A stretch of DNA of 64,000 nt, from IMG/VR virus record IMGVR_UViG_3300017917_001342, positions 186,001 through 250,000 of that record, one strand, 5' to 3'. Made by a program: the position numbers and the translations under genes. This document shows positions 7,807-40,311 of the stretch, piece after piece; positions within the stretch are counted from its first letter, which is position 1; every line of letters starts with the position of its first letter. Under the pieces are notes generated by a model. It was not told where the DNA came from. It worked only from the letters and a program-made list of their open reading frames with translations, and made no database searches.

Positions 7807-7828
7807 ATCTGTTAGTAATTTAAGATAA

Positions 7829-7853
7829 AAGGGTGGTGCAATGCGCCACCCTT
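7829..7853 (+). terminator. Intrinsic terminator hairpin
   Basis: AAGGGTGGTGC-AAT-GCGCCACCCTT followed by a T-rich tract. Confidence 0.7.
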
Positions 7854-7881
7854 ATTCTTATGCAGACAATATATATGTTGC

Positions 7882-7887
7882 TAAATA
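7882..7887 (+). promoter_or_regulatory. Late-type promoter TAAATA
   Basis: CTAAATAT, 38 nt upstream of ATG 7926. Confidence 0.65.
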
Positions 7888-17366: not shown

Positions 17367-17372
17367 TAAATA
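17367..17372 (+). promoter_or_regulatory. Late-type promoter TAAATA, 5 nt from the ATG
   Basis: CTAAATATCTGCATG. Confidence 0.7.
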
Positions 17373-17377
17373 TCTGC

Positions 17378-19693
17378 ATGAAAATTAGCAGTATATTCAA
17401 AAACACAACTATATTAACTGATGGCAGGTCGTGGCGTCGTGACCCTGACGACGACATGTATAGTCGCGACAAAACATCAAAATACAAAATCAAAGATATT
17501 GTAGATGAACCGCCAGAAGAATTGGAAATCTCAGATGAAGAAAACTTCAAAGGGAAAGACCGAATAATTAAAATTCCTCATCTGAATTGTATATTTCTCA
17601 TTACTGCACATTGGCAATATAGACAATCACTTAGACATGGCAATTTAGACATTGCCATTGAAAAGCTATCAAACTTATTTGAACGTAACTACGACGTGAT
17701 ATCTAAACTTCCATATGGGTCGGAGTTTGGATTAATAGATCAAAAGAATTACAAAACTGTTTTTACCAAGCGTAGATCTAAAAACGGTACTACTGTATAT
17801 GCAACGAAAACCCTGCTTTCGCCTGAGATGAACCTAAGACCGTCGCAGTATTTTTTTAGAGAATCGTCTGACAACAGTGTGTTCTTAAAAGACCTTGTAA
17901 AAATGTCAGTTGGTATGCCGGACGCTGATTTTTGGATAAGACGCAGTGGCCAATTAAAAAGTCTCGGTGAACCTAGCAAACAATTTGACCCTGACAAAAT
18001 AGGTATCAAAGTTACTGCTACCAATATTATAGATCCAAACTATCTCTATTATGTGTTTATGAATTTGCAAAACCAGGGCGTGTTTGCGCAAATGGCAACA
18101 GGATCAACTGGTTTACAACACATTAAAATCAGCAGTCTTGCAAAAATACCGTTTGCACTAAGTGAATCGCTAAATGAAAACGACGATGAACCTATACGTA
18201 TTAGACTGCGTGGTAATGAAGATACTGCAAAGCGTTGGATCAAAAGCGTATACGATCAATTCCCAGCAAATCCGTTAAATGATCGTCAACACGTTATGCA
18301 ATTTGGCGACGATGCATACGTAGTGTTTGAATTAACACCAAGTTTTAACCGCAGAGGTGCCGTAGAAGTCAAGTGGATAAGCGCACACCCACAACGCAAA
18401 GGTCTCGGTTCTAAAGCACTGAAAACGTTGCAAGATTTAGCGCAAAAGAACAATGTTATGCTTACTCTTTACCCATGGGAAAAAGGTGAGATTAGCCAAC
18501 ATGATCTCAAGCGTTATTATAAAAAGCATGGGTTCAGAGGCGAAGGCGGCGGTAGTGATTACATGAAGTGGGATCCGCTGAACGAAAAAGACTACGACGA
18601 TATAGACGACGATGATAACCGCACACCTGACATAGAAGGTGCTAAGAAATATGTACAGGCTGTAAAACGAGATTTTGATCAGTTTGGTGAGTTGCCAATT
18701 ACTGGCATAATGAATGATTTAGAATATCGCTATAACTTAGATCCATCAACGGTTGATCAAGTTCTACAGCCTGTTAAAGACGACATTGTAATCTACATAA
18801 ACACTGAATTTGGAAAAGGTGAATACAGTATATACGGTGCAGTGCGTCGTCTAGATAAACTGTACAGATCAGGTATCAGTTGGCACGAACTGTATCGCAT
18901 GTTAGATAATCACAAGCACAGTATTATAAAATACATGCTCAGTCAGATTAAAAAAGGTGCAACTGGTATGGTAATGGAAATGACTATCATACTCAAACGT
19001 ATGGGACTTGACTGGCCAGAACTTACTGCAATACAACGCAGTTTGCGTGCAGATAAGCAAGCATTGCCAGAATCATATTCAAAAGAACAACGTATTGAGT
19101 TTGCACAAAAAGCATTTGAGCGAGGTACTGTATACGGTTTTTGGCGATTAGATCTGCTTGATTTAAAAGCTAGCGAAGTACCAGGCGCTATAGAAATACT
19201 TAACGCTGATAAAGACCGTTTTATTAGTGCATTATTACGCATGGTTAAAGACGGTAGCTTTTCTGCTGTGAAATATGCATTAAAAAATTATAGACATCAC
19301 GGGCTGGATTGGCCAGAACTTGATGTTATAGAACGCAGTGTTAAACAGATATCTGAATCCGACAGTTATGATGATCTGCGTAAACGCAACATGGACAAAG
19401 TGCTTAAATCGTTTAAGCTTGGTGCGTGGAACGGCTTCAAAAATCTAGATTTTTTTAATATGAAAGCTGCTGAAGTTCCAGGTGCAGTAGAAGCGTTAGA
19501 ACAGTTTAAAGAACAATTTGTTAAGATGCTGTTAACTCGCATGAAGAGTGGTGACTATGGTGATATAGGTACTGCTAGAAACCTAGCTGCTCAGATGCAA
19601 GGTGTTGGTATGAGTTGGCCGGAATTAGACATTGTTATAAAAAGTGCTAACAAAGCGTTTGATGATTATGATAAAAGTTTAGGCAACGACTGA
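17378..19693 (+). CDS. Multidomain protein: possible RNase-like domain + HsdS-type TRD + GNAT + three WPEL-terminated modules
   Basis: ITAHWQYRQSLR; IDPNYLYYVF...ATGSTGLQHIKISSLAKIPF; QRKGLGSKAL...RYYKKHGF; WPEL x3. Confidence 0.8.
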   Translation: MKISSIFKNTTILTDGRSWRRDPDDDMYSRDKTSKYKIKDIVDEPPEELEISDEENFKGKDRIIKIPHLNCIFLITAHWQYRQSLRHGNLDIAIEKLSNLFERNYDVISKLPYGSEFGLIDQKNYKTVFTKRRSKNGTTVYATKTLLSPEMNLRPSQYFFRESSDNSVFLKDLVKMSVGMPDADFWIRRSGQLKSLGEPSKQFDPDKIGIKVTATNIIDPNYLYYVFMNLQNQGVFAQMATGSTGLQHIKISSLAKIPFALSESLNENDDEPIRIRLRGNEDTAKRWIKSVYDQFPANPLNDRQHVMQFGDDAYVVFELTPSFNRRGAVEVKWISAHPQRKGLGSKALKTLQDLAQKNNVMLTLYPWEKGEISQHDLKRYYKKHGFRGEGGGSDYMKWDPLNEKDYDDIDDDDNRTPDIEGAKKYVQAVKRDFDQFGELPITGIMNDLEYRYNLDPSTVDQVLQPVKDDIVIYINTEFGKGEYSIYGAVRRLDKLYRSGISWHELYRMLDNHKHSIIKYMLSQIKKGATGMVMEMTIILKRMGLDWPELTAIQRSLRADKQALPESYSKEQRIEFAQKAFERGTVYGFWRLDLLDLKASEVPGAIEILNADKDRFISALLRMVKDGSFSAVKYALKNYRHHGLDWPELDVIERSVKQISESDSYDDLRKRNMDKVLKSFKLGAWNGFKNLDFFNMKAAEVPGAVEALEQFKEQFVKMLLTRMKSGDYGDIGTARNLAAQMQGVGMSWPELDIVIKSANKAFDDYDKSLGND

Positions 19694-22836: not shown

Positions 22837-22842
22837 TAAATA
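22837..22842 (+). promoter_or_regulatory. Late-type promoter TAAATA, 5 nt from the ATG (second copy at 22801-22806)
   Basis: ATAAATATCATCATG. Confidence 0.7.
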
Positions 22843-22847
22843 TCATC

Positions 22848-23756
22848 ATGAGACTATTAGACATTTTCACCCCCGATTACCTCCTGGAAGACCTTGAAGG
22901 TCAAAAAGCCCAGCGTGGTCAATTTATCAAAGATAAACTAGGTAAAGACTTTAAAGGTCTACCTGGGTATGATGACATCGATAAGCTAATTGACAAAATT
23001 GGCGAAGTTGACCCGTCACGTAATGGCATTTACATGCCCTGGATCGCGCGGTTGGTAATCACTAAACCGGGCGAAAACCGATCTGAAGACCTTGATCGTG
23101 TTGGACAAGACTTGCAAAACTTTGAACAGTTTAAAGCACGTATTGCTAACAAAGATATTAACAGTTACAAGAGTTTCCAACAGCTCTATGACGTAATTGA
23201 ACCATTTACTAGACCACAGCCAAAAACTGCTGATCAAAAAGCCAAAGAAAAAGAAGCAGCAGAAATTGCTAAACTGAAGAATGAAATTATCACAGTTTAC
23301 AATGGTCCCGAAGGTTGGATACGTATTCCTAAAACACAAGCTGCTGCGGTGTATCTAGGTCGTGGTACTCGTTGGTGTACTGCTGCTGATCGCAACAACA
23401 TGTTTAATCACTATAGTAAAAACGATAACCTGTTTGTTGTACACGATAAAGCACAGGCCAAAGCCTACAGAGAGTTTATGGCAGACCCTGCTAATGCTGG
23501 TAAGCGTAAACCGCACAACGGTATGTATCAGATGCACATTGAAAGTGGACAGTTTGCGTCAGATGACGACAGCAATCAAGGTATGAATGCTGTACCAGAT
23601 TGGGCAAGAACTCCAATTCTTGATTACTACAAAGCTAACAATCCAAAACTAACTTGGAAGCAGATTATGACACTGAGTACATTCGGTGACGAAAATCTTG
23701 CTGCGGGTACAGAACATGAGGATCTAATCAACCTCATGAAAGCCTATGGTATCTAA
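22848..23756 (+). CDS. Hypothetical protein with PcfJ-like GxGTxWCT domain
   Basis: Start moved to MRLLDIF...LLE/D; IPKTQAAAVYLGRGTRWCTAA...FNHY motif. Confidence 0.65.
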   Translation: MRLLDIFTPDYLLEDLEGQKAQRGQFIKDKLGKDFKGLPGYDDIDKLIDKIGEVDPSRNGIYMPWIARLVITKPGENRSEDLDRVGQDLQNFEQFKARIANKDINSYKSFQQLYDVIEPFTRPQPKTADQKAKEKEAAEIAKLKNEIITVYNGPEGWIRIPKTQAAAVYLGRGTRWCTAADRNNMFNHYSKNDNLFVVHDKAQAKAYREFMADPANAGKRKPHNGMYQMHIESGQFASDDDSNQGMNAVPDWARTPILDYYKANNPKLTWKQIMTLSTFGDENLAAGTEHEDLINLMKAYGI

Positions 23757-24830: not shown

Positions 24831-26198
24831 ATGCAGATACAGAGTTTAATGGAAGCAAAAAACATTCCGCCGGATGTAGCTGCAAAAATAGACAGCATAG
24901 TAAAATCCATGCTGAAAACTGGCTACATAGATGTGTGTGTAAGACGACTTGAAGATGAAGGTCTCACAGATGCTGGCATACTTGATGTGTTAACTCCACA
25001 TGCAGACAAGCTAGTAAATCTCATAACAAGTAAAAAGCATAAGACATTACCTGGTTATACAGTTTATGAGTTGCTATTACTATTAGGTATAGGAGCAAGA
25101 TGGCCGTCGTTAATTGCAGCACTTGCCAATAACAAAGAGTCAGTAATTAAGTACATTTTAACACAGTTTAAAGAATATTCTAACGATGATATCGAAATGG
25201 ATATAATAAATTTCGATATAAAAGTTTTGCAAAAATTAGGTATCGATTGGCCAGAATTAGCAGTTATAAAAAAATCTGTTGAAAACGAATTGGTAAGAAT
25301 GGGTCACCCGCCATCATTAATGGAAGCACAGCCTGTAATACCTCAAAAACTTATTAAAATATTCAACCAACATCTTAACAACATATATGAGCGCGGTATT
25401 GACAAGTTAGCGTATTTGATAATTGATATGAAAAATGCAGGTGCAACCGATCAACAGATTGCATCGCTTCTCAGTGAAAAGCGTCAAGAAATTGTAAAGA
25501 TACTCAGAAATACTATTCACAATGAATCTCCTAAAAACTGGAGAGCAATTAACGAATTTGCTGTTGCAATTGCGTCATTATTAGATCTTGGAATCAAATG
25601 GCCGCCATTATTAGAATTATTAAACTACTATCGAGATAAAATCGAAGCCTGGGCAATTGCTGCGGTATTTGATGCAGGATTTGGCAAGCATGTTGCTGAG
25701 AAATTACGTAAGTTTGAACAATTGGGTTTTGATATATTACCAATACGCCGAGCAATCAAAGCAAACATATTACCTACACTAAAAGAATATCTTACTAAAA
25801 ATGGTATTGATCATTATACAGTTGCTAAATTAGAGGCTATGCATAGACTAAATCTATTGCCTAAAGCTCTAGATGACAAAACTACTAAACTTGTTTTTGA
25901 TGCAATAGAAAACTCTATGAGCAAAGGTATGCCTAATGATTTCAAAAATGCATTGAAATATTTTGCAATGATGAACATACCAAATCTTGAATCAACCGTA
26001 AAAAGCATAGTAGAAGCTAATAAAACACCTGTTATAAAATCATTACTAACTGCTATGAAAACTGGTTTAGGTAATGCAAACAACTATTACACGTTACCAA
26101 CTTATTACATAGTAGATACACTACAGCTATTACATAAACTAGGTATACAGTGGCCAGAAATTGCTGCAATTACTAGAAGCTTGAAGGCAGGGCGTTGA
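24831..26198 (+). CDS. WPEL-module repeat protein
   Basis: WPSL, WPEL, WPPL, WPEI; leader MQIQSLME/A and internal SLME/A. Confidence 0.85.
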   Translation: MQIQSLMEAKNIPPDVAAKIDSIVKSMLKTGYIDVCVRRLEDEGLTDAGILDVLTPHADKLVNLITSKKHKTLPGYTVYELLLLLGIGARWPSLIAALANNKESVIKYILTQFKEYSNDDIEMDIINFDIKVLQKLGIDWPELAVIKKSVENELVRMGHPPSLMEAQPVIPQKLIKIFNQHLNNIYERGIDKLAYLIIDMKNAGATDQQIASLLSEKRQEIVKILRNTIHNESPKNWRAINEFAVAIASLLDLGIKWPPLLELLNYYRDKIEAWAIAAVFDAGFGKHVAEKLRKFEQLGFDILPIRRAIKANILPTLKEYLTKNGIDHYTVAKLEAMHRLNLLPKALDDKTTKLVFDAIENSMSKGMPNDFKNALKYFAMMNIPNLESTVKSIVEANKTPVIKSLLTAMKTGLGNANNYYTLPTYYIVDTLQLLHKLGIQWPEIAAITRSLKAGR

Positions 26199-28059: not shown

Positions 28060-29227
28060 AAACGCAGATGAATTAATTGCTGATCGTATGGACGGTTTAA
28101 AAAAGCAAGAACCTCTAGCACTTAGAGGATTAATCCATAATCTAAAGAGCAGACCCTATGAATGGTACGATGATGATATTGCTGCACTGTTAGAAGAATA
28201 CAAAGCTGACATATTAAAATACATCACACGCAAATATCATGTGGGCCAGATATCATTACCAACTAATGATATTAAAAAGCTAATGAGTGTTGGAATACAA
28301 TGGCCTGAATTAACTGATCTTGTCAACCGATACAAAACAGCTATTATCAAAAATGTACTAGAAACTCTTAAGCTAGATTACAGAAACGTAGCTGACACTG
28401 TAGGTACGTTGACTAGTATGAATCTCGGTTGGAAAGAATTAGACGCAATTAATCGTAGCTTAAATGCACTGCGTAATAATGTAAACGAAGCTTTAAAGTA
28501 TGATAACAATGAAATAGAAGAACTCAAAACTAACATAATTCAAGACCTACATGACGGATATTATAGAGATGCGTTAGATGTCATAGCAACACTGTGGCAT
28601 GACAATAGTAATCTTGGCGACGTAACTGCTATAACACGTTTATTGGAAAAACATAAACGTGGGTTGATTACACAGTTATTAACTGTAATCAAATATAGTA
28701 GCACTTACGAATTAAGCAAATATTTTAAAGATTTTATTAAAGGACTACAAGATTTTGGGATTGATTGGCCAGAATTCGACGCTATGTTAAAATCGATCAA
28801 CGCTGACAAAACAACACTTGATGAATCTTATTCAAAAAACGATGCAGAACAGTATAAGGATGAAATCATTAATACCATTAAGAAGGATGATATGGATGAT
28901 TTGTTTGAAATGCTTGCTGAGTTTGCATGGATACCGAGAGCACTTGTAGGCGATGTTACAAAACTAAATCGTATACTAGAACTACACAAAGTTCGAGTAA
29001 TAAAAGCATTACTGTCTTATATGCGAGAGCTAGATGACAGCGGTATTTGCTACATCATGCCACAAATTCTAGGCGGTTTAGAACATGCTGGCATAAATTG
29101 GCCCGAGTTAAAAATTATAGATCAAAGTGTTGACAAAATACAAAAACGTCGCGAAGCCGAAGATGACGATTTGTATGAGAGTAGCAAAGCAGTAAATACT
29201 ACTGCAAAAAAGGCTCGCAGACGATGA
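28046..29227 (+). CDS. WPEL-module repeat protein
   Basis: WPEL, WKEL, WPEF, WPEL; junctions VNE/A, LDE/S, LYE/S. Confidence 0.85.
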   Translation: MTSSKNADELIADRMDGLKKQEPLALRGLIHNLKSRPYEWYDDDIAALLEEYKADILKYITRKYHVGQISLPTNDIKKLMSVGIQWPELTDLVNRYKTAIIKNVLETLKLDYRNVADTVGTLTSMNLGWKELDAINRSLNALRNNVNEALKYDNNEIEELKTNIIQDLHDGYYRDALDVIATLWHDNSNLGDVTAITRLLEKHKRGLITQLLTVIKYSSTYELSKYFKDFIKGLQDFGIDWPEFDAMLKSINADKTTLDESYSKNDAEQYKDEIINTIKKDDMDDLFEMLAEFAWIPRALVGDVTKLNRILELHKVRVIKALLSYMRELDDSGICYIMPQILGGLEHAGINWPELKIIDQSVDKIQKRREAEDDDLYESSKAVNTTAKKARRR

Positions 29228-31533
29228 CACCTCATGAAATTCGCGTAACTCTAAATTTCTTCTTAGAAGATCTACAAGAAGAACGTTACATTGATGCTGT
29301 CAATGGTCTGATAGAATTGTATGCCTATACCAATTCTGATTATCCTCCATATGCTGATCGTAAAAACCAAATACCCTTTGACAAAATCAGCGAATTACTA
29401 CAACAGCATAAAACTGGTATTGTAAAACGCTTGTTGCGTTACATGAAGCATTATGATGCAGATGAAGTAAAACGATTTGTGTTGCTTGCTATCAATGCAT
29501 TAAAACACTTTGGTATAGATTGGCCTGAACTAGCTGTTATGAAAAACAGCGTTTCGCCGGAAGTTGAAGAATCCTGGAGCAACAAATATAAGAAAAGCAT
29601 CAATTGCAGCAATCCAAAAGGTTTTAGTCAACGTGCGCACTGTGCTGCTAGACGTAAGCGCAAAGCTGGCGGTAAGACTAAGAGCAAGCCAGTGAGAGAA
29701 GCATTGAGTTCGCCGCTGGGAGGTATTGTGCTGTCAATGCAAGACGCATTGCGAAAAGGCAGTGATGCCGCAGTATCGCATCGTGTTATTGACCTTTGGC
29801 GTGCTAACACAGCAGAACGACAGCGTGCAAGCGATATGCTAGCAGATGTAGAACACTTGGTAACAAGTTATGTAGAACGTCATCTCGGTTCAGAAAATCA
29901 TTTAGATGTACAAGACGGCTTGAACATGCTTCAAGTTTTACCACCAAGTGAAGATTGGGCAGACTTGCAAGTGTTATTAAACAAATACAAAACCAACATA
30001 CTAAAGTATTTGTTAAAGTGCATGAAGGATAATGATATAGATATACCTCATTATCGAATACCTGTGTTGAAAAAATGGGGCACAGATTGGCCAGAACTGG
30101 ACACAATCTACACCAGTGCTGATTCAGAATTGAAAAAACAAAAACGTATAGACGAGGGTGTTATTGCCTATCATGCTAGCCCGGTTGCTACAATTCGCAG
30201 CAAACGTTTTTGGCCATTTACACATTTTGGCAGTGAAAAAGCCGCAGCAGATCGTATCAAATATCTAAAGAAAACAGGCGAACTTGCAAAGGACTCGCCA
30301 GTCAGAGTCTATCAAGTTGAACTCAATATCAACAATCCCGCTGTAATCAAAGATGAACCTGTGCAACACAGTGCAACACAGTTTGCATTTGCATTGAAAA
30401 AGGCCAAGCTGATTTCTCAAGAGGAAATGGAAAGCATCACAAAACTTGGACACGATCCTGTTACCTATAAGCCTACTATGAGTTACGCTGATGCTGAAAA
30501 GCAACGCAATCGTAAATTGAGAGCATTGATGCGTAGCAAAGGCTTTGACGGATTTGCGTATGTGAATCGCTTTGAAGACAAAGGCAGTATGAGCTATGTC
30601 ATACTGGATCCCGCACAAGCTAGAACATTGCGACCAGTTAAAGCAGCGCCCGCAGAATTAAAAGAAGATGAACGCAACAATTTTTCCACAGTGTTTAGAA
30701 ATCGTTCTGAACAAGAAGGTGGTCACCGTTTTACACTCAATGCAGATGAATATGTAGAACATATAGAAAAACTCTTAAAATATGGAATGCTAGCAACTGA
30801 TAATGTAGTGATAGAATTAGCTACGCTGGGTCGACGCAGGCCCGATGCAATTAAAAATTGGCCAGAACTAGCTAACTTATTAAATCAACACAAAGATGAG
30901 TTGATGCGCATTATACAACATCACTTTAATAAAGACGTTACCAGTGAGCATGCAATGGCTCGCAGTGTTGATGTTGCAGGTGCATTAAAGCTAATTGGTA
31001 TAGACTGGCCAGAAATCGCTCAGCTTATTGAAAAGAACAAGCACAAAATAGTCAAAACACTGCTTGAGTTTATGCGAGATGAATATGACGCCCATATCCC
31101 ATACGAACTTAAAACACTGCGTAGCTATGGTGCAGATTGGCCAGAGTTAGCAGTAATTGAAAAAAGCCTAAACGCAGGATTGAATGAATCAAAGTCTAAC
31201 AAATTACCGCAGGACGTTACTGACATGGTAATGGACATGCTTAAACGAGATGGCACAGGCATCGCACTGTATCATATTTGGGAATGGAAATTAGACATAG
31301 ATAAACTGCCAGAATTAGAAGAATTCCTAAACGACCGCAAGCAAACCTATATGGAAATTATGTTGAAAAACATGAAGATGGGCGGAGACGCACTATACGG
31401 TACAGAACAGTATTTAGAACGTTTAGAAGGTACTAAAATAAATTGGCCTGAACTCAAAGTCATACGTAATAGCTTAAATAAGCTATTAGCAGAATTGCAT
31501 GCGTCGGAAGAACATCCAAATGAAAACCATTGA
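29224..31533 (+). CDS. Multidomain protein: WPEL modules + basic Cys peptide + ADP-ribosyltransferase (ART-PolyVal-like)
   Basis: AYHAS...THFG...VYQVELNINNP...KGFDGFAYVNRFED...SYVILDPAQ; six WPE[LI]; TAAATA at 29193-29198 upstream. Confidence 0.85.
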   Translation: MTPHEIRVTLNFFLEDLQEERYIDAVNGLIELYAYTNSDYPPYADRKNQIPFDKISELLQQHKTGIVKRLLRYMKHYDADEVKRFVLLAINALKHFGIDWPELAVMKNSVSPEVEESWSNKYKKSINCSNPKGFSQRAHCAARRKRKAGGKTKSKPVREALSSPLGGIVLSMQDALRKGSDAAVSHRVIDLWRANTAERQRASDMLADVEHLVTSYVERHLGSENHLDVQDGLNMLQVLPPSEDWADLQVLLNKYKTNILKYLLKCMKDNDIDIPHYRIPVLKKWGTDWPELDTIYTSADSELKKQKRIDEGVIAYHASPVATIRSKRFWPFTHFGSEKAAADRIKYLKKTGELAKDSPVRVYQVELNINNPAVIKDEPVQHSATQFAFALKKAKLISQEEMESITKLGHDPVTYKPTMSYADAEKQRNRKLRALMRSKGFDGFAYVNRFEDKGSMSYVILDPAQARTLRPVKAAPAELKEDERNNFSTVFRNRSEQEGGHRFTLNADEYVEHIEKLLKYGMLATDNVVIELATLGRRRPDAIKNWPELANLLNQHKDELMRIIQHHFNKDVTSEHAMARSVDVAGALKLIGIDWPEIAQLIEKNKHKIVKTLLEFMRDEYDAHIPYELKTLRSYGADWPELAVIEKSLNAGLNESKSNKLPQDVTDMVMDMLKRDGTGIALYHIWEWKLDIDKLPELEEFLNDRKQTYMEIMLKNMKMGGDALYGTEQYLERLEGTKINWPELKVIRNSLNKLLAELHASEEHPNENH

Positions 31534-34171
31534 TTTAAACATATTTTTAGAAGCTCAAGGTCCTGCAAAGATACCAACTGGTTCTGGTAAGTCCACTATT
31601 GCAAACCCTGCGCATTCTCCCGGTAGCTATTACGAAGGTGATCCTGCTAACTTTGATTTTGGTGCACAGCGTAGAAACTACCAAGCATTAAATGCCGCAT
31701 TGGCACGTAACGGTAAAAAGCTTAATTACATCGGTGTTTCCAAAGCAGATAGTGGTAGAGACACCTTTGTTGCAACTGCACCCGGTGTTGTATGGTACAA
31801 ATACGAAGGCAGCAATCCACAGTCTGGACAAAACATACTCTACATCAACGGTGTTAAAGACAAGTTTACGTCATTTATGGCATTGTCGCCAGAGGAACAA
31901 GACAAGAAACTGTCTGCAAGTCCTGCTGCATTGAGTTTACAAAAAGGTGATGTGTTTGGTTATATCAATGCACTGGCTGCGTCAGATGCGCCTGCAAACA
32001 CTGTTGTTGACAGTTTGAATCAAAACAAAGATTTGATACTGCAACGAATAGCAAACGAACTGTTAAACTACCCAAAATACATATCTAAGATAAAAACCTT
32101 TAATAAAGCATTGGCTAACAAAGGTGCGTTGCTACCATGGTTAACAGTTGACGAAATTTTAAAAGCAATCCAGCCTGTGATATCGAAAGATCTGTTCGAC
32201 TATTTTTTAAGGTGGCCAAGTACAGATTCATTGAAACGTATCAAATCTGCAATCGCAGTTGGATTGCTGTTTGACATGTCTTATATGCAAGAATTGACCA
32301 ATAACAATGTTGATGGGTTTGTCGAACGCTTTTCTAGTCCCGGCATGTTTACCGGACCAGGATATCGCATGGTAGACAACCTAATAGAATTTCTAACTCT
32401 TGTACGCTACAGTAACCCACGATTAGAAGTTAAGAATCTAATTGACAATGTGGATTATAAGCGCATTGTAAAATATTTAAACGATTCTAGCAATGTAACA
32501 GGAAATGTATATCAAGCTGCTAAACTGTTGTTAAATGCAGGATTTCCAAAAGATCGCATTGTACAGGCATTTGAAGATCTAAAAGAAGAAATGGTTGGCA
32601 ATGCACTGCTTAAATTAGTTAGAACTGCTAGAGTTGATGATATTGGAAATCTCAATGCAGCACTTAATATACTTGGTATATCATGGCCCGAAATTGTTGG
32701 GGATAATATACGTAAGCTGATTGAAAATAACAAAACTAATATTATTAAAACTATACTTACTAATGTAAAAAATGGAGTTTTTCAAAATGCGTTAAATGCT
32801 GTCGATTTCTTTATAGATAACGACTACAAATGGCCAGAGCTAGCTGCAATAAAACGAAGCTTAATCGCTTCACTAAATAACCGAACAGACGAAACACGCA
32901 ACAGTTTGAGTAACAATATGAAAATCGACGAAGTTGAACAATTAGACGAGGACCTTGGTAATCTAAATCAGCTAGGTATGGGTCCGCTGCTTAATGTACT
33001 CAAACAGGAGCATTGGAGTCGCCGAAATTACGATCCAGAGATACGTCCGGTCGGCAAGCGTTTTGTTGGATCGGGCTATGACCGACGAGTAGGTCCTAAC
33101 AGCGAAATACAAGACATTGGTGCAGTAAAAGACATTCTTAAATCTCTACGTAAAGCATTTAAAACCACAGCAGCCGTTGCATTTGCACTATATATAGGCG
33201 GCAAACCTGTGATGTTTGGTGTCACAGATGAATATACACTAGCAGGCAGCAGTCGTCATGGTAAAATTGCCTACGATCTAACACCCTGGGCAGAAACTGT
33301 TAAGCTGTATGATCAGCAACAAAAAGGTCGCTACGCACCTAGTACACAGTTGACAACTATGCGTGACAAAGAAGAACGCAATTACAGTGATCCACGCGAC
33401 AAATGGGATACTCCTGTAATGGTTACTCAAAAATACGCAGGTGATATGATATCAACTGGCGACTTGTCAACTATTGCAAAAGTAATTGAATTTATTTCTG
33501 CTAACACAGGCGAACCTATCACAGCTAAGTTAGTAATGAAAGACGAAGCTGGCTTTGAAAAAATGAAAAGCCGACAGATCAATCATGTTGCAGTTCGCAG
33601 TGCAGCAGAAGATCTCAAGCATAGACTAAGTGTTTACAAGAACAGCAAAAAACCATCTGTAGATACTATTGAAGATTTTATTGCTATGAGCCTTAGAAAA
33701 CCAGGCAGTGTAGTTCAGTTTGCAGGTGTACCATATCGTTTAACTGCAACCAGCTACGATAAAATAGAACCAGTATCTTTGCTATCAGGTAAAGAGTTTA
33801 GCACAGATTATAAAAGCAATCTCAAGGACGATTATCATAACAGTGTTAGGATCTATTACAGATACGACAAAGACACTAATCAATTGTTGCCGATATATGC
33901 CGAATGGTATGACAAAACTGATCCAAATAACCCATCATATCAACGAGTATCTGCTGTTCTAGATGGCAAAGGTTATATCAAAAGTAGACTAAAAGTGCAG
34001 TCGCTAACAAAAGAAGCGGTGATACCAAAAATATTAGAGAAGATTAAATCGTCGCAATTCAAAGATGCATTGTTATATGTTCAGGCATTGCAAAAAATGG
34101 GTATGGACTGGCCAGAGTTAAGTGTTATTGAACGCAGTGCAAATGCTGAATTAAACAAGCCGAGAGACTGA
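31520..34171 (+). CDS. Large WPEL-module protein, apparently a fusion of two genes
   Basis: Start moved to MKTIDLNIFLE/A; internal TAAATA (32874) and in-frame MKIDEVEQLDE/D at 32918; both halves end in WPEL. Confidence 0.8.
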   Translation: MKTIDLNIFLEAQGPAKIPTGSGKSTIANPAHSPGSYYEGDPANFDFGAQRRNYQALNAALARNGKKLNYIGVSKADSGRDTFVATAPGVVWYKYEGSNPQSGQNILYINGVKDKFTSFMALSPEEQDKKLSASPAALSLQKGDVFGYINALAASDAPANTVVDSLNQNKDLILQRIANELLNYPKYISKIKTFNKALANKGALLPWLTVDEILKAIQPVISKDLFDYFLRWPSTDSLKRIKSAIAVGLLFDMSYMQELTNNNVDGFVERFSSPGMFTGPGYRMVDNLIEFLTLVRYSNPRLEVKNLIDNVDYKRIVKYLNDSSNVTGNVYQAAKLLLNAGFPKDRIVQAFEDLKEEMVGNALLKLVRTARVDDIGNLNAALNILGISWPEIVGDNIRKLIENNKTNIIKTILTNVKNGVFQNALNAVDFFIDNDYKWPELAAIKRSLIASLNNRTDETRNSLSNNMKIDEVEQLDEDLGNLNQLGMGPLLNVLKQEHWSRRNYDPEIRPVGKRFVGSGYDRRVGPNSEIQDIGAVKDILKSLRKAFKTTAAVAFALYIGGKPVMFGVTDEYTLAGSSRHGKIAYDLTPWAETVKLYDQQQKGRYAPSTQLTTMRDKEERNYSDPRDKWDTPVMVTQKYAGDMISTGDLSTIAKVIEFISANTGEPITAKLVMKDEAGFEKMKSRQINHVAVRSAAEDLKHRLSVYKNSKKPSVDTIEDFIAMSLRKPGSVVQFAGVPYRLTATSYDKIEPVSLLSGKEFSTDYKSNLKDDYHNSVRIYYRYDKDTNQLLPIYAEWYDKTDPNNPSYQRVSAVLDGKGYIKSRLKVQSLTKEAVIPKILEKIKSSQFKDALLYVQALQKMGMDWPELSVIERSANAELNKPRD

Positions 34172-34174
34172 TCT

Positions 34175-35437
34175 ATGAAGATTACAGAGTTATCAGAGGC
34201 TGTAGAATTACCGCCAGATGTTATAGAACAACTTAACGGTTTATTAATTAAACCATTGCGTGATACTCTGATAAGACGTATGGCATATCCAAATCTCTAT
34301 TACATAATTGATACATTTGAAGATATGCTTGCTGATAAAAAATATGCCAAGTCGCCGCGTCGTAAACAGGCAATTGCGTTGCTATTTCCATATGTTTTGC
34401 AAGCATTAGATGAGATTATCAAAAATGCCAAAGCAGACGGTAGCTATTATCCTTTCACTAGAATAGTCAAGCTACTGAGATACAGCATAGACAACGAAGC
34501 TGTTGCAGAAGTTTTAGAAAACAACAAAGGCAAACTCTTACAGATATTAAAAGCCTTTATTGACAAAACTCACAAATCTGCACATAACGTTGGACGAAAT
34601 GCCGACGAGAGTGCAATTGTAGATATTGTCAATGCTCTTGATCATGCAGGCATTGATTGGATAGAACTCAAAGACCTATATAAACAACATTTCTATAATC
34701 GCTATAGCGGCTGGTTAAGTCAATCGCAAGACAAATGGGGTACAAATACTGTATTCAATGTGTTAAACGACATGAGTAGGCACAAACTCACTATAGATGA
34801 TCTCAACGAAGAACTAGCGAACCGTTTACAGTCTATGAAATCAACAATATTAAACAGATCACTGTTTAATTTTAGACATGATTCTGTGCGATACGGTTTG
34901 GTAGAAATGGGAGACTACTATAAAAAACTGCGACGTCTTGGGTTCGATTGGCCTGAATTACAAATATCTAGCTTAGATCAATTCAAAACACCTATCATGC
35001 GTGAGTTACTGACACTGTTTAAAGAACAAAACGTAGGCCGCGCAGCAAAAATAGTAGCAGAATTAAAGCAGGCAACAGATTGGCCAGAACTAGCTGCTAT
35101 GGAACGATCACTAGGTGCTAAACAACTTGATGAAGAACTGCACCCTGCACGTATCAAAGCAGTTGATGAATCTCTGCGCAACGGTGATTATATAGGTGCT
35201 GCACATTATATGGGTGTGTACGGTGTCAACATAGATGAGTTCGACAAGCGTGTTCGTGAACGATTTGAAGAAATGAAACCAGAAATCATTCGTGAAATGC
35301 TACAGCTTGTCAAAAACATTTCGCTCGATCGTGGTTATCGAATAATGGACAATGTTCGTAAAGCTGGACTAGGTTGGCCAGAGATTGATATCATATTCAA
35401 AAGTCTAGACAAGTCCTACACTGAACGATACCGTTAA
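34175..35437 (+). CDS. WPEL-module repeat protein
   Basis: Leader MKITELSE/A; WIEL, WPEL, WPEL, WPEI; LDE/E junction. Confidence 0.85.
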   Translation: MKITELSEAVELPPDVIEQLNGLLIKPLRDTLIRRMAYPNLYYIIDTFEDMLADKKYAKSPRRKQAIALLFPYVLQALDEIIKNAKADGSYYPFTRIVKLLRYSIDNEAVAEVLENNKGKLLQILKAFIDKTHKSAHNVGRNADESAIVDIVNALDHAGIDWIELKDLYKQHFYNRYSGWLSQSQDKWGTNTVFNVLNDMSRHKLTIDDLNEELANRLQSMKSTILNRSLFNFRHDSVRYGLVEMGDYYKKLRRLGFDWPELQISSLDQFKTPIMRELLTLFKEQNVGRAAKIVAELKQATDWPELAAMERSLGAKQLDEELHPARIKAVDESLRNGDYIGAAHYMGVYGVNIDEFDKRVRERFEEMKPEIIREMLQLVKNISLDRGYRIMDNVRKAGLGWPEIDIIFKSLDKSYTERYR

Positions 35438-35444
35438 ATATAGT

Positions 35445-36023
35445 ATGTTTAACGAATCAGCGCCTCTTACAGCAGATGGCAGTTTTGCCAAAAGTCTAAG
35501 CTACAGCAAACTCTGGATGTGTCTAGAGTTAAAACGTCTTATGGAAGAATTGAACATCAAAAAATTCAACGCTGTATACAGTTTAGGCAGTTGGTATGGC
35601 AATATGGGTATATTCATGTTGCTTACCTACGTACCGTTTAAAGTATTGGTTAATGTAGATATTGACCCAGAACCATTAGCAGCAAGTCAAACAGTTCTTA
35701 AAAAACTGTCACCTAATAAAAAAATCATAGGCCTCTGCAAAGATGCCAACAACATAAAATATGTTGCAGCACAGCCAAGTTTAGTAATCAATACCAGTAC
35801 TAATAATATGAAAAACTCTGGTTGGTTGGATCATATACCAACTGGCACTGTGGTTGCTATACAGGGTAGAAACAACGAACCCAAAAACAAACTCAATACT
35901 TGCAACTCGCTAGATGAGTTTGATGCACAATATCCACTGAGAGATGTACAGTTTTTAGGCAGCATAAAGCTAGCTGATCCGGGCGACAAATACCAACGTT
36001 GGATGAAGATAGGTATAAAGTAA
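35445..36023 (+). CDS. Class I SAM-dependent methyltransferase-like protein
   Basis: YSLGSWYG, VNVDIDP, DAN, LVINTS; TAAATA at 35435-35440, 4 nt before the ATG. Confidence 0.75.
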   Translation: MFNESAPLTADGSFAKSLSYSKLWMCLELKRLMEELNIKKFNAVYSLGSWYGNMGIFMLLTYVPFKVLVNVDIDPEPLAASQTVLKKLSPNKKIIGLCKDANNIKYVAAQPSLVINTSTNNMKNSGWLDHIPTGTVVAIQGRNNEPKNKLNTCNSLDEFDAQYPLRDVQFLGSIKLADPGDKYQRWMKIGIK

Positions 36024-37542: not shown

Positions 37543-40311
37543 ATGAGTTACGTTGATGCAATCATTGACAAAGAAAAGAATACTATTTTTGTTGCAGAAC
37601 GTGCGCCAGACGGGCGTAGAATACTAACAGAACACCCGACAAAATATGTAGTGTATTGGCCAAGTGATCGAGGACAATGGACCAGTATACACGGTGTTAA
37701 ATTAACACGCTTTCAAACAAATAAAAGCAAAGATTTCCAAAGAGAACTTGGTGTAATACCAAAAGCCAAACAGCACGAAAGCGATATTAATCCAATCTTT
37801 CGCTGTTTATACGACAACTACAGAGATGCGCCAAGTCCAGACCTACATGTTGGACTGTTCGACATTGAAGTAGACTTTGATCCAGAACGTGGATTTTCTA
37901 GTCCAGATGATGCATTTGCACCAATCACAGCAATTTCAATCTGGCTAAACTGGATGGACCGTTGTTTTACGCTGGCTATCAAACCGAAAACTATGAGTAC
38001 AGAAGCTGCAAAGACAGTGTGTGATAGTTTTCCGGACACTATGCTATGCAACACAGAAAAAGAACTGCTAGACATATTTCTCACACTGATCGAAGACTGC
38101 GACATTCTAAGTGGTTGGAACTCAGAAGGCTTTGATATTCCCTATATCTATAACCGTGTAGTGCAGGTATTAGGCAAAAGTGAAACTGCGAGAATGTGTC
38201 TTTGGGGCAAGTATCCAAAGAAGCGTGAATATGAAAGTTATGGTCGTCAAACTATCACCTATGATCTAGTAGGTCGTGTACACTTAGACTATCTACAACT
38301 TTATCGCAAACACACCTATCACGAAATGCACAGCTATAGACTTGATGCAATTGGTGAATATGAAGTAGGTGAACGTAAAACACAGTATGAAGGCACTCTT
38401 GATCAGCTCTACAACAATGACTTTAAAAAGTTCATTGAATACAACAGACAAGACGTTTTACTGCTAGCTAAAATTGATGCAAAGCTAAAGTTCATTGAAC
38501 TGTCTAACAATCTTGCACATACCAACTGTGTGTTGCTGCAAACTACAATGGGCGCTGTGGCACTTATTGACCAAGCTATTGTCAATGCTGCTAGAGACTT
38601 AGAGTTAATTGTACCTAGTAGAGTTCGAGAAACTGAAGCTGAACGTGAAGAGCGTTGGGCAGAAGAAACTGAGATGGGCGGCTCTGTGGTTGGTGCATAT
38701 GTTGCTGATCCAAAACCTGGTATGCACGATTGGATCGGCGGTGTTGACATCAACAGTCTGTATCCGTCAGTGATTCGTGCGCTAAACATGAGTCCAGAAA
38801 CTATTCTTGGACATATACGTCCAGACGTTACTGATGCATTTGTACTTAACAAAGTCAAAAACGAAAAGAAAACTTTTGCAGACGCATGGAACGGTGTATT
38901 CGGTACACTGGAATATCAAGAAGTAATGGAACAGTCTGCTAAGGTTATCACGGTTGATTTCGAAGATGGTACTAGTGCGCAGGTAACTGCTAAAGAAGTC
39001 TATAATCTAGTTTGGAACAGCGGTAAGAAACTAACACTCAGCGCAAACGGTACTATATTTGACTATAGCAAACCTGGACTTATTCCGGGCGTGTTGTCTC
39101 GCTGGTACAGAGAACGTAAAGAACTACAGGCTGAATATAAAAAGTGGGCAAAGCTTGCAGATGAAGCTACAGATCCTGATCAAAAATCAGAGTGCAAAAA
39201 GAAAGCTGAGTTTTATGATCAACGCCAATTGATCAAGAAGATTTTGCTTAACAGTTTGTATGGCGCTATCGGTAACCCAGGCAGTCGCTGGTATGATCCA
39301 AGAGTTGCACAGAGTACTACACTTAGCGGTCGCTGTGTTGTTAAACACATGAGCAGTAAGATTAATGAAATTATCACTGGTGAATACAATCACGTTGGTA
39401 AAGCAATTATCTATGGTGACACTGACTCTGCATACTTTACAGCGTTTACAACTATGCGTGATAATCCAGAGTTTGCGGACTATGACTGGAGTAAAGACAA
39501 TGTAATTGATCTCTATGATAAAATTGCAGACATTACCAACGCTAGTTTCCCAGAGTTTATGTATAGAGCATTTGGGTGCCCAGATGAAAACGGTAAGATC
39601 ATTCGCGCAGCACGAGAACTCTGTGCAGCAAAAGGTCTGTTTATTACCAAGAAACGCTATGCTGTTTTAATCTATGACAAAGAAGGCAAGCGTAAAGATC
39701 AGAATGGTAAACCCGGCGAGATCAAAGCAATGGGTCTTGATCTTAAACGCAGTGATACTCCAAAAACTGTGCAAGACTTTTTGCAAAGCATACTGATATC
39801 TGTGCTTACAGGTGTTAAGAAAGAATCTGTGCTGCAACAGATTATGGACTTCCGCAAAGAATTCCGTAGCTGGCCGGGTTGGGAAAAAGGTTCACCTAAG
39901 CGTGCAAACAACATCACACACCACGCTCGCAATCAAGAGATTATGGAAAAGGTCAACTTCAACAAAGTTGGTAGTGACAGCAAGCGTGCAATGGTACCAG
40001 GGCATGTGCTTGCAAGTCTTAACTGGAACAAACTCAAGCGAATCTACAATGACAACTACAGTATGCCAATTCAAGATGGACAGAAGGTTATTGTATGTAA
40101 ACTAAAACCAAATCCCAGTGGTATGACCAGTGTGGCATATCCAACAGATGAACTTAAACTACCACAATGGTTTAAAGATTTACCGTTTGATCATGATGCA
40201 ATGGAAGAAGCACTGATTGATAAGAAGCTTGATAACCTGCTTGGTGTGTTAAAGTGGAACGTAAATGACAACAAGGCCAATACCAGCTTTGATGATCTGT
40301 TTAGTTTTTAA
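37543..40311 (+). CDS. Family-B DNA polymerase (T4 gp43-like)
   Basis: Exonuclease motifs DIEVD, GWNSEGFDIPY, YNRQD; polymerase motifs DINSLYPS, KILLNSLYG, YGDTDS, KKRY; no intein or intron. Confidence 0.97.
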   Translation: MSYVDAIIDKEKNTIFVAERAPDGRRILTEHPTKYVVYWPSDRGQWTSIHGVKLTRFQTNKSKDFQRELGVIPKAKQHESDINPIFRCLYDNYRDAPSPDLHVGLFDIEVDFDPERGFSSPDDAFAPITAISIWLNWMDRCFTLAIKPKTMSTEAAKTVCDSFPDTMLCNTEKELLDIFLTLIEDCDILSGWNSEGFDIPYIYNRVVQVLGKSETARMCLWGKYPKKREYESYGRQTITYDLVGRVHLDYLQLYRKHTYHEMHSYRLDAIGEYEVGERKTQYEGTLDQLYNNDFKKFIEYNRQDVLLLAKIDAKLKFIELSNNLAHTNCVLLQTTMGAVALIDQAIVNAARDLELIVPSRVRETEAEREERWAEETEMGGSVVGAYVADPKPGMHDWIGGVDINSLYPSVIRALNMSPETILGHIRPDVTDAFVLNKVKNEKKTFADAWNGVFGTLEYQEVMEQSAKVITVDFEDGTSAQVTAKEVYNLVWNSGKKLTLSANGTIFDYSKPGLIPGVLSRWYRERKELQAEYKKWAKLADEATDPDQKSECKKKAEFYDQRQLIKKILLNSLYGAIGNPGSRWYDPRVAQSTTLSGRCVVKHMSSKINEIITGEYNHVGKAIIYGDTDSAYFTAFTTMRDNPEFADYDWSKDNVIDLYDKIADITNASFPEFMYRAFGCPDENGKIIRAARELCAAKGLFITKKRYAVLIYDKEGKRKDQNGKPGEIKAMGLDLKRSDTPKTVQDFLQSILISVLTGVKKESVLQQIMDFRKEFRSWPGWEKGSPKRANNITHHARNQEIMEKVNFNKVGSDSKRAMVPGHVLASLNWNKLKRIYNDNYSMPIQDGQKVIVCKLKPNPSGMTSVAYPTDELKLPQWFKDLPFDHDAMEEALIDKKLDNLLGVLKWNVNDNKANTSFDDLFSF

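What the first reader, a model, noticed from the sequence alone, without database searches (positions are those of the whole stretch)
32830..32953. Fossil gene boundary inside an ORF: internal late promoter and second leader
Seen: right after a terminal WPEL module, the frame passes through TAAATA (32874-32879) and a linker to an in-frame ATG at 32918. That ATG encodes MKIDEVEQLDE/D, a typical leader with a cleavage site. The motif-to-ATG distance (38 nt) equals that at 7882/7926. Inference: two genes fused by loss of a stop codon, tolerated because the old leader supplies the protease site. This gives a simple mechanism for how the polyproteins arise; the downstream half may still be expressed alone.
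Basis: partly seen in the sequence, partly recalled or inferred. Interest (0 to 1): 0.7.

Follow-up and report, generated by a model that had tools for sequence, protein, structure and literature searches.

The report
Two phage genes fused, old leader kept
Inside one 883-residue gene of an uncultured 518-kb freshwater jumbo phage lies the buried start of a formerly separate gene, whose short leader with a protease site is still conserved; this shows how giant phages can build polyprotein-like precursors by joining neighbouring genes.

Summary
WPEL is at 32831-32842, TAAATA at 32874-32879, and an in-frame ATG at 32918 encodes MKIDEVEQLDE|D. The 38-nt spacing equals that at 7882/7926.

The fusion inference is strongly supported. 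More than 50 stand-alone homologues of 390-440 aa start with Met plus an M[KRL][ILV]x[DE]..LxE leader exactly where M474 aligns. That Met and the Glu before LGNL are invariant. One relative carries the two halves as adjacent separate genes, 31 nt apart. On the C-half tree, the fused versus stand-alone state changes at least three times.

Contigs from six metagenome assemblies, differing by up to 8%, keep the frame open, so no stop was miscalled.

"Fossil" is only half right. Against a 43%-identical fused relative, the linker has decayed (2/16 identical) but the leader is kept (9/11). AlphaFold2 models two folded halves joined by a disordered joint.

The genome encodes a T4-type prohead protease. 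The likeliest mechanism is therefore cleavage after LDE, releasing both halves inside the prohead. This step is inferred, not shown.

The internal promoter is unproven. TAAATA is avoided fivefold inside genes, so its presence is notable. However, it is the weakest variant (CTAAATA) and is absent from the other fused relative.

The parts
31475..31480 (+). TAAATA late-promoter-like motif of the fused gene, 39 nt before its real start
   Evidence: It lies in the 3' end of the upstream ORF 29224-31533.
31520..34171 (+). Fused gene (883 codons plus stop). The longest ORF starts at 31499, but homologues begin at the Met of 31520.
   Evidence: P0001, P0002, P0045 and P0031 all start at the equivalent of M8.
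31520..31552 (+). N-terminal leader MKTIDLNIFLE, a T4 CTS-like propeptide with F-L-E before Ala
   Evidence: Residues 1-16 of the model have pLDDT below 50.
31553..32593 (+). N-half body: an alpha/beta domain (about aa 19-145) followed by a helical region. It has its own stand-alone homologues.
   Evidence: P0045, P0031, P0025, P0044 and many 130-250-aa proteins.
32594..32869 (+). Two tandem WPEL helical modules (WPEI at 32684-32695, WPEL at 32831-32842) that close the N-half
   Evidence: The stand-alone N-half homologues P0045 and P0031 end 12 residues after the equivalent Trp.
32870..32917 (+). Linker SLNNRTDETRNSLSNN. It is probably the translated former end of the upstream gene plus the intergenic spacer. 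It is disordered and fast-evolving.
   Evidence: pLDDT below 50 for model residues 455-475. 2/16 identity to P0002. Unusually little RNA structure.
32874..32879 (+). TAAATA (in context CTAAATAA), a late-promoter-like motif 38 nt before the internal ATG. Function unproven.
   Evidence: Unchanged in strains up to 8% divergent. Absent in L002.
32918..32950 (+). Internal leader MKIDEVEQLDE: the former start codon and propeptide of the downstream gene. Predicted cleavage is after E484 (L-D-E|D).
32951..34168 (+). C-half mature part (DLGNLNQLGMGPLLNVLKQ...), an alpha/beta fold without a PDB match, ending in a WPEL module (WPEL at 34109-34120)

Best explanation
ORF 31520-34171 is a fusion of two formerly separate late genes of a T4-superfamily jumbo phage. 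Each was built as a short N-terminal leader, a body and a closing WPEL module.

The upstream gene lost its termination. Its tail and the roughly 45-nt spacer are now read as a disordered linker (32870-32917), which runs into the old start codon (32918) and leader of the downstream gene.

The leader MKIDEVEQLDE resembles T4 capsid-targeting propeptides and ends in L-x-E. The phage's T4-type prohead protease most likely cuts there, and also after the N-terminal leader. The 883-residue precursor would then be split inside the prohead into the same two mature proteins as before. This would make the fusion harmless and keep the internal leader under selection.

Shown: the fusion, the position of the old start, its conservation, the open frame, the disordered joint, and the presence of the protease gene.

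Inferred: packaging into the head, cleavage at E484, and how the stop was lost.
For: A phmmer search of 1.84 billion proteins gave 328 hits. Dozens of 390-440-aa proteins align from their residues 1-15 to query residues 474-482. Their N-termini read M[KRL][ILV]x[DE][IL]..E[DKN] directly before LGNLxQLxVGPLINVLKQ. E11 is invariant and M1 nearly invariant across 57 sequences. M467 and E477 are invariant in the full-length alignment.

The halves occur as separate adjacent genes on ERZ28612991: P0045 (454 aa, ending in a WPEL-like module), then 31 nt, then P0008 (407 aa).

Syntenic relatives L003-L008 have the C-half alone between homologues of the window's flanking genes.

The fused relative P0002 (43% identity) keeps MKISEVTQLDED after an unrelated linker. 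Fusions to other partners, P0006, P0020 and P0046, keep the Met-Lys; P0010 keeps only L-R-E-D. The C-half tree shows at least three state changes.

The frame is open with no indels across the joint in assemblies X1, X2, X4, X5, X6 and X7. The nearby substitutions I checked are synonymous or conservative.

AlphaFold2 gives two confident halves, with pLDDT below 50 only at the N-terminus and at the joint.

A Peptidase_S77 (T4 gp21-type) gene is present at genome 407627-408076. The major capsid protein has an I-L-F-E|S site.

T4 CTS propeptides are 10-19 residues long, with processing determinants at positions 8 and 10 (PMC9026906).
Against: There is no proteomic or biochemical evidence that any of these proteins is in the virion or is cut. 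The phage is uncultured.

The C-half has no known fold or function.

On the tree, the window's C-half is sister to stand-alone genes (99/96 support), while the other fused form, P0002, lies outside. The history is therefore either repeated fusion or fusion followed by loss of the N-half. The AU test does not decide between them (p = 0.094).

Retention of Met-Lys in most fused forms is not needed for cleavage alone. It hints at another role: targeting or internal initiation.
Confidence: 0.7

Rival explanations
1. Dual expression. Besides the fused precursor, the downstream half is still made on its own, either from the internal CTAAATA late promoter or simply by internal initiation at ATG 32918 on the long mRNA. 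The old boundary would then still be a working gene start. This can coexist with the best explanation.
For: TAAATA is strongly avoided inside genes: 38 observed against 210 expected on the sense strand. Only about 19 copies are deep inside genes in 441 kb, so finding one within 60 nt of the old start has a chance of about 0.003-0.03. The prohead protease gene itself is preceded by CTAAATAT. Met-Lys is conserved in five of six fused architectures. The region around the ATG is unusually unstructured. T4 gp21 has a used internal start, which is a precedent (PMC9026906).
Against: CTAAATA is the least avoided variant (observed/expected 0.36, against 0.10 for ATAAATA). There is no TAAATA within 120 nt of the internal ATG in the fused relative L002, whose four TAAATA copies all precede gene starts. 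The 38-nt spacing is uncommon. The Shine-Dalgarno match of -2.2 kcal/mol is equalled by 37% of internal ATGs. Conservation of the motif in strains up to 8% divergent is uninformative, because only two synonymous sites fall in it.
Confidence: 0.25
2. The fused protein stays whole. The 'leader' would be only an N-terminal segment of the C-domain, not a cleaved propeptide, and the ORF encodes a stable two-domain protein.
For: No cleavage data exist. The leader forms a short helix in the model. L-x-E occurs often by chance.
Against: The Glu at P1 is invariant and the hydrophobic residue at P3 nearly invariant over 57 divergent sequences, while the rest of the leader varies in length from 10 to 29 residues. 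About 20 genes in the genome share the same M-K/R-hydrophobic-x-acidic start. The T4-type protease is present. The leader has low pLDDT.
Confidence: 0.2
3. Fission rather than fusion. The two-domain protein would be ancestral, and the many stand-alone genes would be derived splits.
For: The window's fused C-half is sister to stand-alone genes. Its leader is closer to that of the distant fused P0002 (9/11 identical) than to that of the sister clade, so at least one loss of the N-half is plausible.
Against: 35 of 40 rows across all deep branches are stand-alone. Fused forms have different N-partners. A Met plus a full leader at the joint is what a start leaves behind, not what a split creates. 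The N-half also has stand-alone homologues that end at the module.
Confidence: 0.07
4. Assembly or sequencing artefact: a real stop or frameshift at the joint was miscalled.
For: None beyond the general possibility for a metagenomic contig.
Against: Contigs from six runs in at least five studies, identical or up to 8% divergent, cross 32840-32950 without gaps or stops. Independently predicted proteins P0001 and P0002 are fused too.
Confidence: 0.02

Closest known systems
T4 internal proteins (IPI, IPII, IPIII, Alt) with capsid targeting sequences cleaved by prohead protease gp21
   Same: A short N-terminal propeptide (10-19 aa) that starts M-K, has hydrophobic positions and ends in a Glu preceded two residues earlier by Leu/Ile. 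The bodies behind a conserved leader are highly diverse. A gp21-type protease gene is in the same genome (PMC9026906, PMC3012670).
   Different: Here one leader lies 466 residues inside a protein, at a fusion joint. The bodies are large (about 400-470 aa), carry WPEL modules and have no similarity to T4 IPs. Targeting and cleavage are untested.
Proteolytically processed head and inner-body/ejection proteins of giant phages phiKZ, 201phi2-1 and SPN3US
   Same: Many paralogous head proteins are cut after Glu at short motifs by a gp21-related protease, with several sites per precursor (PMC5694885, PMC9026906).
   Different: Those phages are a different lineage with S/A-x-E motifs and long propeptides. 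No case is described there, to my knowledge, of a joint that is demonstrably the start of a formerly separate gene.
Rosetta-stone gene fusions of adjacent genes
   Same: Both halves exist as separate genes, adjacent in one relative, and as one ORF here.
   Different: The joint keeps a start codon, a processing signal and possibly a promoter. The fusion may therefore be undone post-translationally.
T4 late promoters (TATAAATA)
   Same: An A/T-rich -10-type element. In this genome NTAAATA is enriched before starts and avoided inside genes.
   Different: The internal copy is CTAAATAA (6 of 8), is not conserved in L002, and no TSS data exist.

Membership tests
T4-type capsid targeting sequence / prohead-protease propeptide | Short (10-19 aa) propeptide at the start of the protein, with hydrophobic targeting positions | tested here: met
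   The stand-alone homologues have 10-29-aa leaders of the form M[KRL][ILV]x[DE][IL]. The window's copy is 11 aa but internal.
T4-type capsid targeting sequence / prohead-protease propeptide | Cleavage motif with Leu/Ile at P3 and Glu at P1 | tested here: met
   The motif is L-D-E|D at 482-484. Glu is invariant and P3 hydrophobic in 57 sequences.
T4-type capsid targeting sequence / prohead-protease propeptide | A gp21-type prohead protease encoded by the phage | tested here: met
   Peptidase_S77 hit, 88.8 bits, at genome 407627-408076.
T4-type capsid targeting sequence / prohead-protease propeptide | The protein is packaged into the head and the propeptide is removed | not testable with these tools
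   The phage is uncultured and no proteome exists.
Gene fusion of formerly separate genes | Each half has full-length stand-alone homologues whose ends coincide with the joint | tested here: met
Gene fusion of formerly separate genes | The halves are found as adjacent separate genes in a relative | tested here: met
   P0045 followed by P0008, 31 nt apart, on ERZ28612991.
Gene fusion of formerly separate genes | The stand-alone state is ancestral | tested here: inconclusive
   The tree is unrooted. Stand-alone forms fill all deep branches and there are at least three state changes. AU p = 0.094 for one fused clade.
T4-type late promoter | Match to TATAAATA | tested here: inconclusive
   The sequence is CTAAATAA. 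The core TAAATA is present, and the C variant is also found before the protease gene, but it is the least avoided variant in coding DNA.
T4-type late promoter | Conserved at the same place in relatives | tested here: not met
   No TAAATA occurs within 120 nt of the internal ATG in L002. Near strains keep it, but this is uninformative.
T4-type late promoter | Transcription start a few nt downstream; gp55-type sigma factor present | not tested
   No usable RNA data exist, and a gp55 homologue was not searched for.
Pfam / PHROG families | Significant profile match | tested here: not met
   No families matched the 890-aa ORF.

The most novel reading that the evidence does not exclude
The buried boundary is still a working gene start. 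The internal CTAAATA promoter and/or ATG 32918 would yield a stand-alone C-half with its own targeting leader, alongside the fused precursor. One locus would then deliver two packaging routes and tunable amounts of the same cargo. The conserved internal Met-Lys-Ile would reflect this dual use rather than cleavage alone.
Probability: 0.2. Interest if true: 0.6.

Novelty: new variant of a known kind. Interest (0 to 1): 0.5.

Why it matters
Giant phages carry many large, unannotated head-associated proteins, and how these arise is poorly understood. This locus gives a clean, datable example. All three states are seen: genes apart, adjacent, and fused. The joint still shows the old start and processing signal, and the state changed at least three times within one family.

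If the protease cuts at the retained leader, fusion costs nothing. That would explain why polyprotein-like precursors accumulate in phages that have a Glu-specific prohead protease.

The result also defines two uncharacterised, widespread protein families (the N-half domain and the C-half fold) and a WPEL module. It gives a testable prediction for cleavage at E484.

Tried and rejected
- Megablast and tblastn of the ORF against the phage collection gave no match. Only the DNA polymerase placed the phage, near Atu_ph07 and Rak2-like jumbo phages.
- Pfam and PHROG searches gave nothing for the ORF.
- The search for related loci with the single protein found no relative, and the 57-sequence alignment was too diverse for it. 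A 10-sequence alignment worked.
- Foldseek against PDB gave no significant match for the C-half. The ESM Atlas gave only scores of about 0.5, including an 'IpIV internal head protein' cluster, too weak to use.
- A leader matrix without the Met is not specific, because it picks up amphipathic helices everywhere. I therefore dropped the idea of finding Met-less buried leaders that way.
- The internal 'MKAAEV' in ORF 17378-19693 was rejected as a leader, because it aligns with 'LKASEV' in the preceding repeat.
- A test of ORF 24831-26198 for an internal duplication of leader plus body found only WPEL-module similarity.
- Conservation of TAAATA in divergent strains was uninformative, and Shine-Dalgarno strength was non-diagnostic.
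- Sigma-70 and terminator scans were at background level.
- DNA of the contigs for P0001 and for P0045/P0008 could not be fetched. The linker could therefore not be aligned to a true intergenic spacer, and the way the stop was lost stays open. Out-of-frame TAA triplets at 32862 and 32874 allow a frameshift route, but they are not significant.
Full report
**Setting**

The window is bases 186001-250000 of a single 518,643-bp virus contig with direct terminal repeats, 41% G+C, judged complete. Its family-B DNA polymerase (37543-40311) is 43-49% identical to those of Agrobacterium phage Atu_ph07, Sinorhizobium phage Phosso, Xanthomonas XaC1 and the Rak2/CBB group. The genome also encodes a T4-type major capsid protein and a T4 gp21-type prohead protease (Peptidase_S77). 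It is therefore an uncultured jumbo phage of the T4 superfamily. Public runs place it in pond and freshwater metagenomes.

**The observation**

- The finding lies in ORF 31499-34171 (+, 890 codons). Homologues show the real start is ATG 31520 (MKTIDLNIFLEA).
- WPEL (W445-L448) is at 32831-32842.
- The frame then reads tca cTA AAT Aac, which puts TAAATA at 32874-32879.
- The linker SLNNRTDETRNSLSNN follows, and ATG 32918 opens MKIDEVEQLDED.
- The 38-nt spacing equals that between TAAATA 7882-7887 and ATG 7926.

**Local context**

- Ten + strand genes between 12961 and 35437 carry about 26 copies of a ~45-residue helical module ending G.xWPEL..I..S. Each of these proteins ends in one, but most copies are internal.
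- About twenty genes of the genome begin M-[KR]-[ILV]-x-[DE]-[LIF]....
- A matrix built from those starts ranks M474 third of about 2,800 internal Mets (11.6 bits against 17-25 for real starts). This is suggestive but not decisive.

**The decisive evidence: homologues**

A phmmer search of 1.84 billion representative proteins returned 328 hits.

The C-terminal part (474-890) matches dozens of proteins of 390-440 residues. Their own residues 1-15 align with query residues 474-482, and four of them align 1 to 474 exactly. Their N-termini are MKINEILTED, MRLIDLRPEQLNEH, MKINEIILEN and the like, always directly before the conserved LGNLxQLxVGPLINVLKQ.

In a 57-sequence alignment the Glu two residues before LGNL is invariant and Met1 nearly so. 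In an alignment with the full ORF, the internal Met and that Glu are among only three invariant columns.

The N-terminal part has its own stand-alone homologues. P0045 (454 aa) and P0031 (499 aa) start with the same kind of leader and stop 12 residues after the Trp of a closing WPEL-like module.

On ENA contig ERZ28612991, P0045 is followed after 31 nt by P0008, a 407-residue C-half homologue starting MKTPDALLEN|LGNL.

In closer relatives (L003-L008, 51-57% identity), the C-half is a separate gene. It sits directly between homologues of the window's flanking genes 29224-31533 and 34175-35437, and the N-half is absent.

Fused forms:
- P0001 (92% identical) and P0002 (43% identical, L002:8001-10688) have the same N-partner as the window.
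- P0006, P0010, P0020 and P0046 have other N-partners.

**History**

On a maximum-likelihood tree of 40 C-halves, the window and P0001 are sister to the stand-alone P0003/L005/L008 clade (99/96 support). P0002 lies outside, and P0006 with P0010 form a third fused group. This requires at least three changes of state.

An AU test does not reject placing the three same-partner fusions together (p = 0.094). Repeated fusion, or one fusion followed by loss of the N-half, both remain possible. The window's leader is closer to that of P0002 (9/11 identical) than to that of its sister clade (MTIDHLDLLED), which hints at the second route.

Stand-alone forms fill all deep branches, and a start codon plus a whole leader sits at the joint. 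Fusion, not fission, is therefore the origin.

**Is the ORF real?**

Logan contigs from six runs in at least five studies cross the joint without gaps or stops.
- X2 has a 596-nt contig with no differences.
- X4, X5, X6 and X7 differ by 2-8%.
- The changes I checked near the joint are synonymous or conservative: gag>gaa, tta>cta, gac>gat, cga>cca, gac>aac and cga>caa.

A miscalled stop is excluded as far as contigs can show.

**Fossil or functional?**

Against P0002, the bodies are 43-45% identical, the linker 2/16 and the leader 9/11. Against P0001, the leader is 11/11.

Five of six fused architectures keep Met-Lys at the joint. P0010 keeps only L-R-E-D.

AlphaFold2 with the family alignment gives a confident C-half (pLDDT 93) with a floppy first ten residues. 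For the whole protein it gives two confident halves, with pLDDT below 50 only at the N-terminus and at model residues 455-475, that is, the linker plus leader.

The spacer has decayed into a linker, but the leader is maintained by selection.

**Mechanism**

T4 internal proteins carry 10-19-residue capsid targeting sequences. Targeting depends on positions 4 and 7, and processing on positions 8 and 10. They are removed by gp21 after Glu (PMC9026906, PMC3012670, PMC5694885).

The leaders here have the same build, the phage has the protease, and its capsid protein has an I-L-F-E|S site.

I infer the following steps, none of which is shown:
1. The 883-residue precursor is made late.
2. It is brought to the prohead core by its N-terminal leader.
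3. It is cut after F-L-E18 and after L-D-E484, releasing the same two mature proteins as the unfused genes would.

That would make the fusion neutral and explain the conserved cleavage site.

**The internal promoter**

In favour:
- NTAAATA behaves as a strong signal in this genome. There are 125 copies in 77 kb of non-coding DNA against 79 in 442 kb of coding DNA.
- Copies cluster 4-7 or 15-30 nt before starts.
- Synonymous-codon shuffles expect 210 sense and 200 antisense copies in genes, where 38 and 41 are found.
- Only about 19 sense copies are deep inside genes, so one lying 38 nt before the old start is notable.
- The protease gene is preceded by the same CTAAATA variant.
- The RNA around the ATG is less structured than in 190 of 200 shuffles.

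Against:
- CTAAATA is the least avoided variant (observed/expected 0.36, against 0.10 for ATAAATA).
- The fused relative L002 has no TAAATA within 120 nt of its internal ATG, although all four of its TAAATA copies precede gene starts.
- The 38-nt spacing is rare.
- The Shine-Dalgarno match is weak.

I put independent expression of the C-half at about one in four.

**How the stop was lost**

This cannot be resolved, because the DNA of the unfused relative was not retrievable. Stand-alone N-halves stop about 12-14 residues after the Trp, which corresponds to 32867-32878. Out-of-frame TAA triplets lie at 32862 and 32874. A frameshift is therefore as possible as a point mutation.

**Comparison and novelty**

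The parts are all of known kinds: CTS-like propeptides, a Glu-specific prohead protease, multiply cleaved head proteins in giant phages, and fusion of neighbouring genes.

What is new is the combination. A T4-type leader is preserved at an internal fusion joint, all intermediate states are documented, and the event recurs, in two uncharacterised protein families of an uncultured 518-kb phage.

I rate it a new variant of a known kind, of moderate interest.

Noticed in passing
window 17367-17378, 22837-22848, 35435-35445; genome 63568, 104611, 239524, 298274, 361232: A class of TAAATA motifs lies only 4-5 nt before the ATG, mostly at genes with MK leaders. With a T4-like start a few nt downstream, these late mRNAs would be leaderless or nearly so. 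In several cases the TAA of the motif is the stop codon of the upstream gene.
   Followed up: partly
whole genome (G000): TAAATA is avoided about fivefold inside genes on both strands: 38 against 210 expected on the sense strand, 41 against 200 on the antisense strand. ATAAATA is the most avoided variant (0.10) and CTAAATA the least (0.36).
   Followed up: yes
window 12961-35437: About 26 copies of a ~45-residue helical 'G.xWPEL..I..S' module occur in ten consecutive genes, often as tandem pairs. Every such protein ends in one. No Pfam or PHROG family matches, and the module is widespread in metagenomic proteins of up to 2,070 aa with up to 14 matched stretches.
   Followed up: partly
window 24831-26198: After the WPEL module at aa 140 comes 'PPSLMEAQPVIP', which echoes the protein's own N-terminus 'MQIQSLMEAKNIPP'. 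This may be a second buried boundary without a Met. BLASTP found only module similarity.
   Followed up: partly
window 17378-19693: About 100-residue tandem repeats are each closed by a WPEL module. The internal 'MKAAEVPGAVEALEQ' is a repeat copy of 'LKASEVPGAIEILNA', not a leader.
   Followed up: yes
window 32951-34168: The C-half folds confidently (pLDDT 93) into an alpha/beta architecture with no PDB match. The only structural relatives are uncharacterised proteins of Agrobacterium phage Atu_ph07 and a Myoviridae sp. in BFVD.
   Followed up: partly
window 31553-31930 (aa 19-145): The N-terminal alpha/beta domain of the N-half is a mobile unit. It is found alone in 130-370-aa proteins and inside much larger multi-repeat proteins (for example P0018, 1,822 aa, 14 stretches).
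   Followed up: no
L002 13437-14009: The relative that carries the fused homologue encodes a 190-aa protein with PCRF/RF-1 (peptide chain release factor) domains just downstream of the cluster.
   Followed up: no
window 7828-7858: A G+C-rich hairpin followed by a T-run (terminator-like) lies directly before the TAAATA at 7882 and the 1,677-codon gene starting at 7926. The listed 1,708-aa ORF start (GTG 7833) is therefore too far upstream.
   Followed up: partly
L003/L004 3137-3147: In the closest relative with a stand-alone C-half, its ATG overlaps the stop of the upstream gene (ATGCCCCATAA), and its leader (MPHNYLDLLED) differs from the window's. This is compatible with secondary loss of the N-half.
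   Followed up: partly
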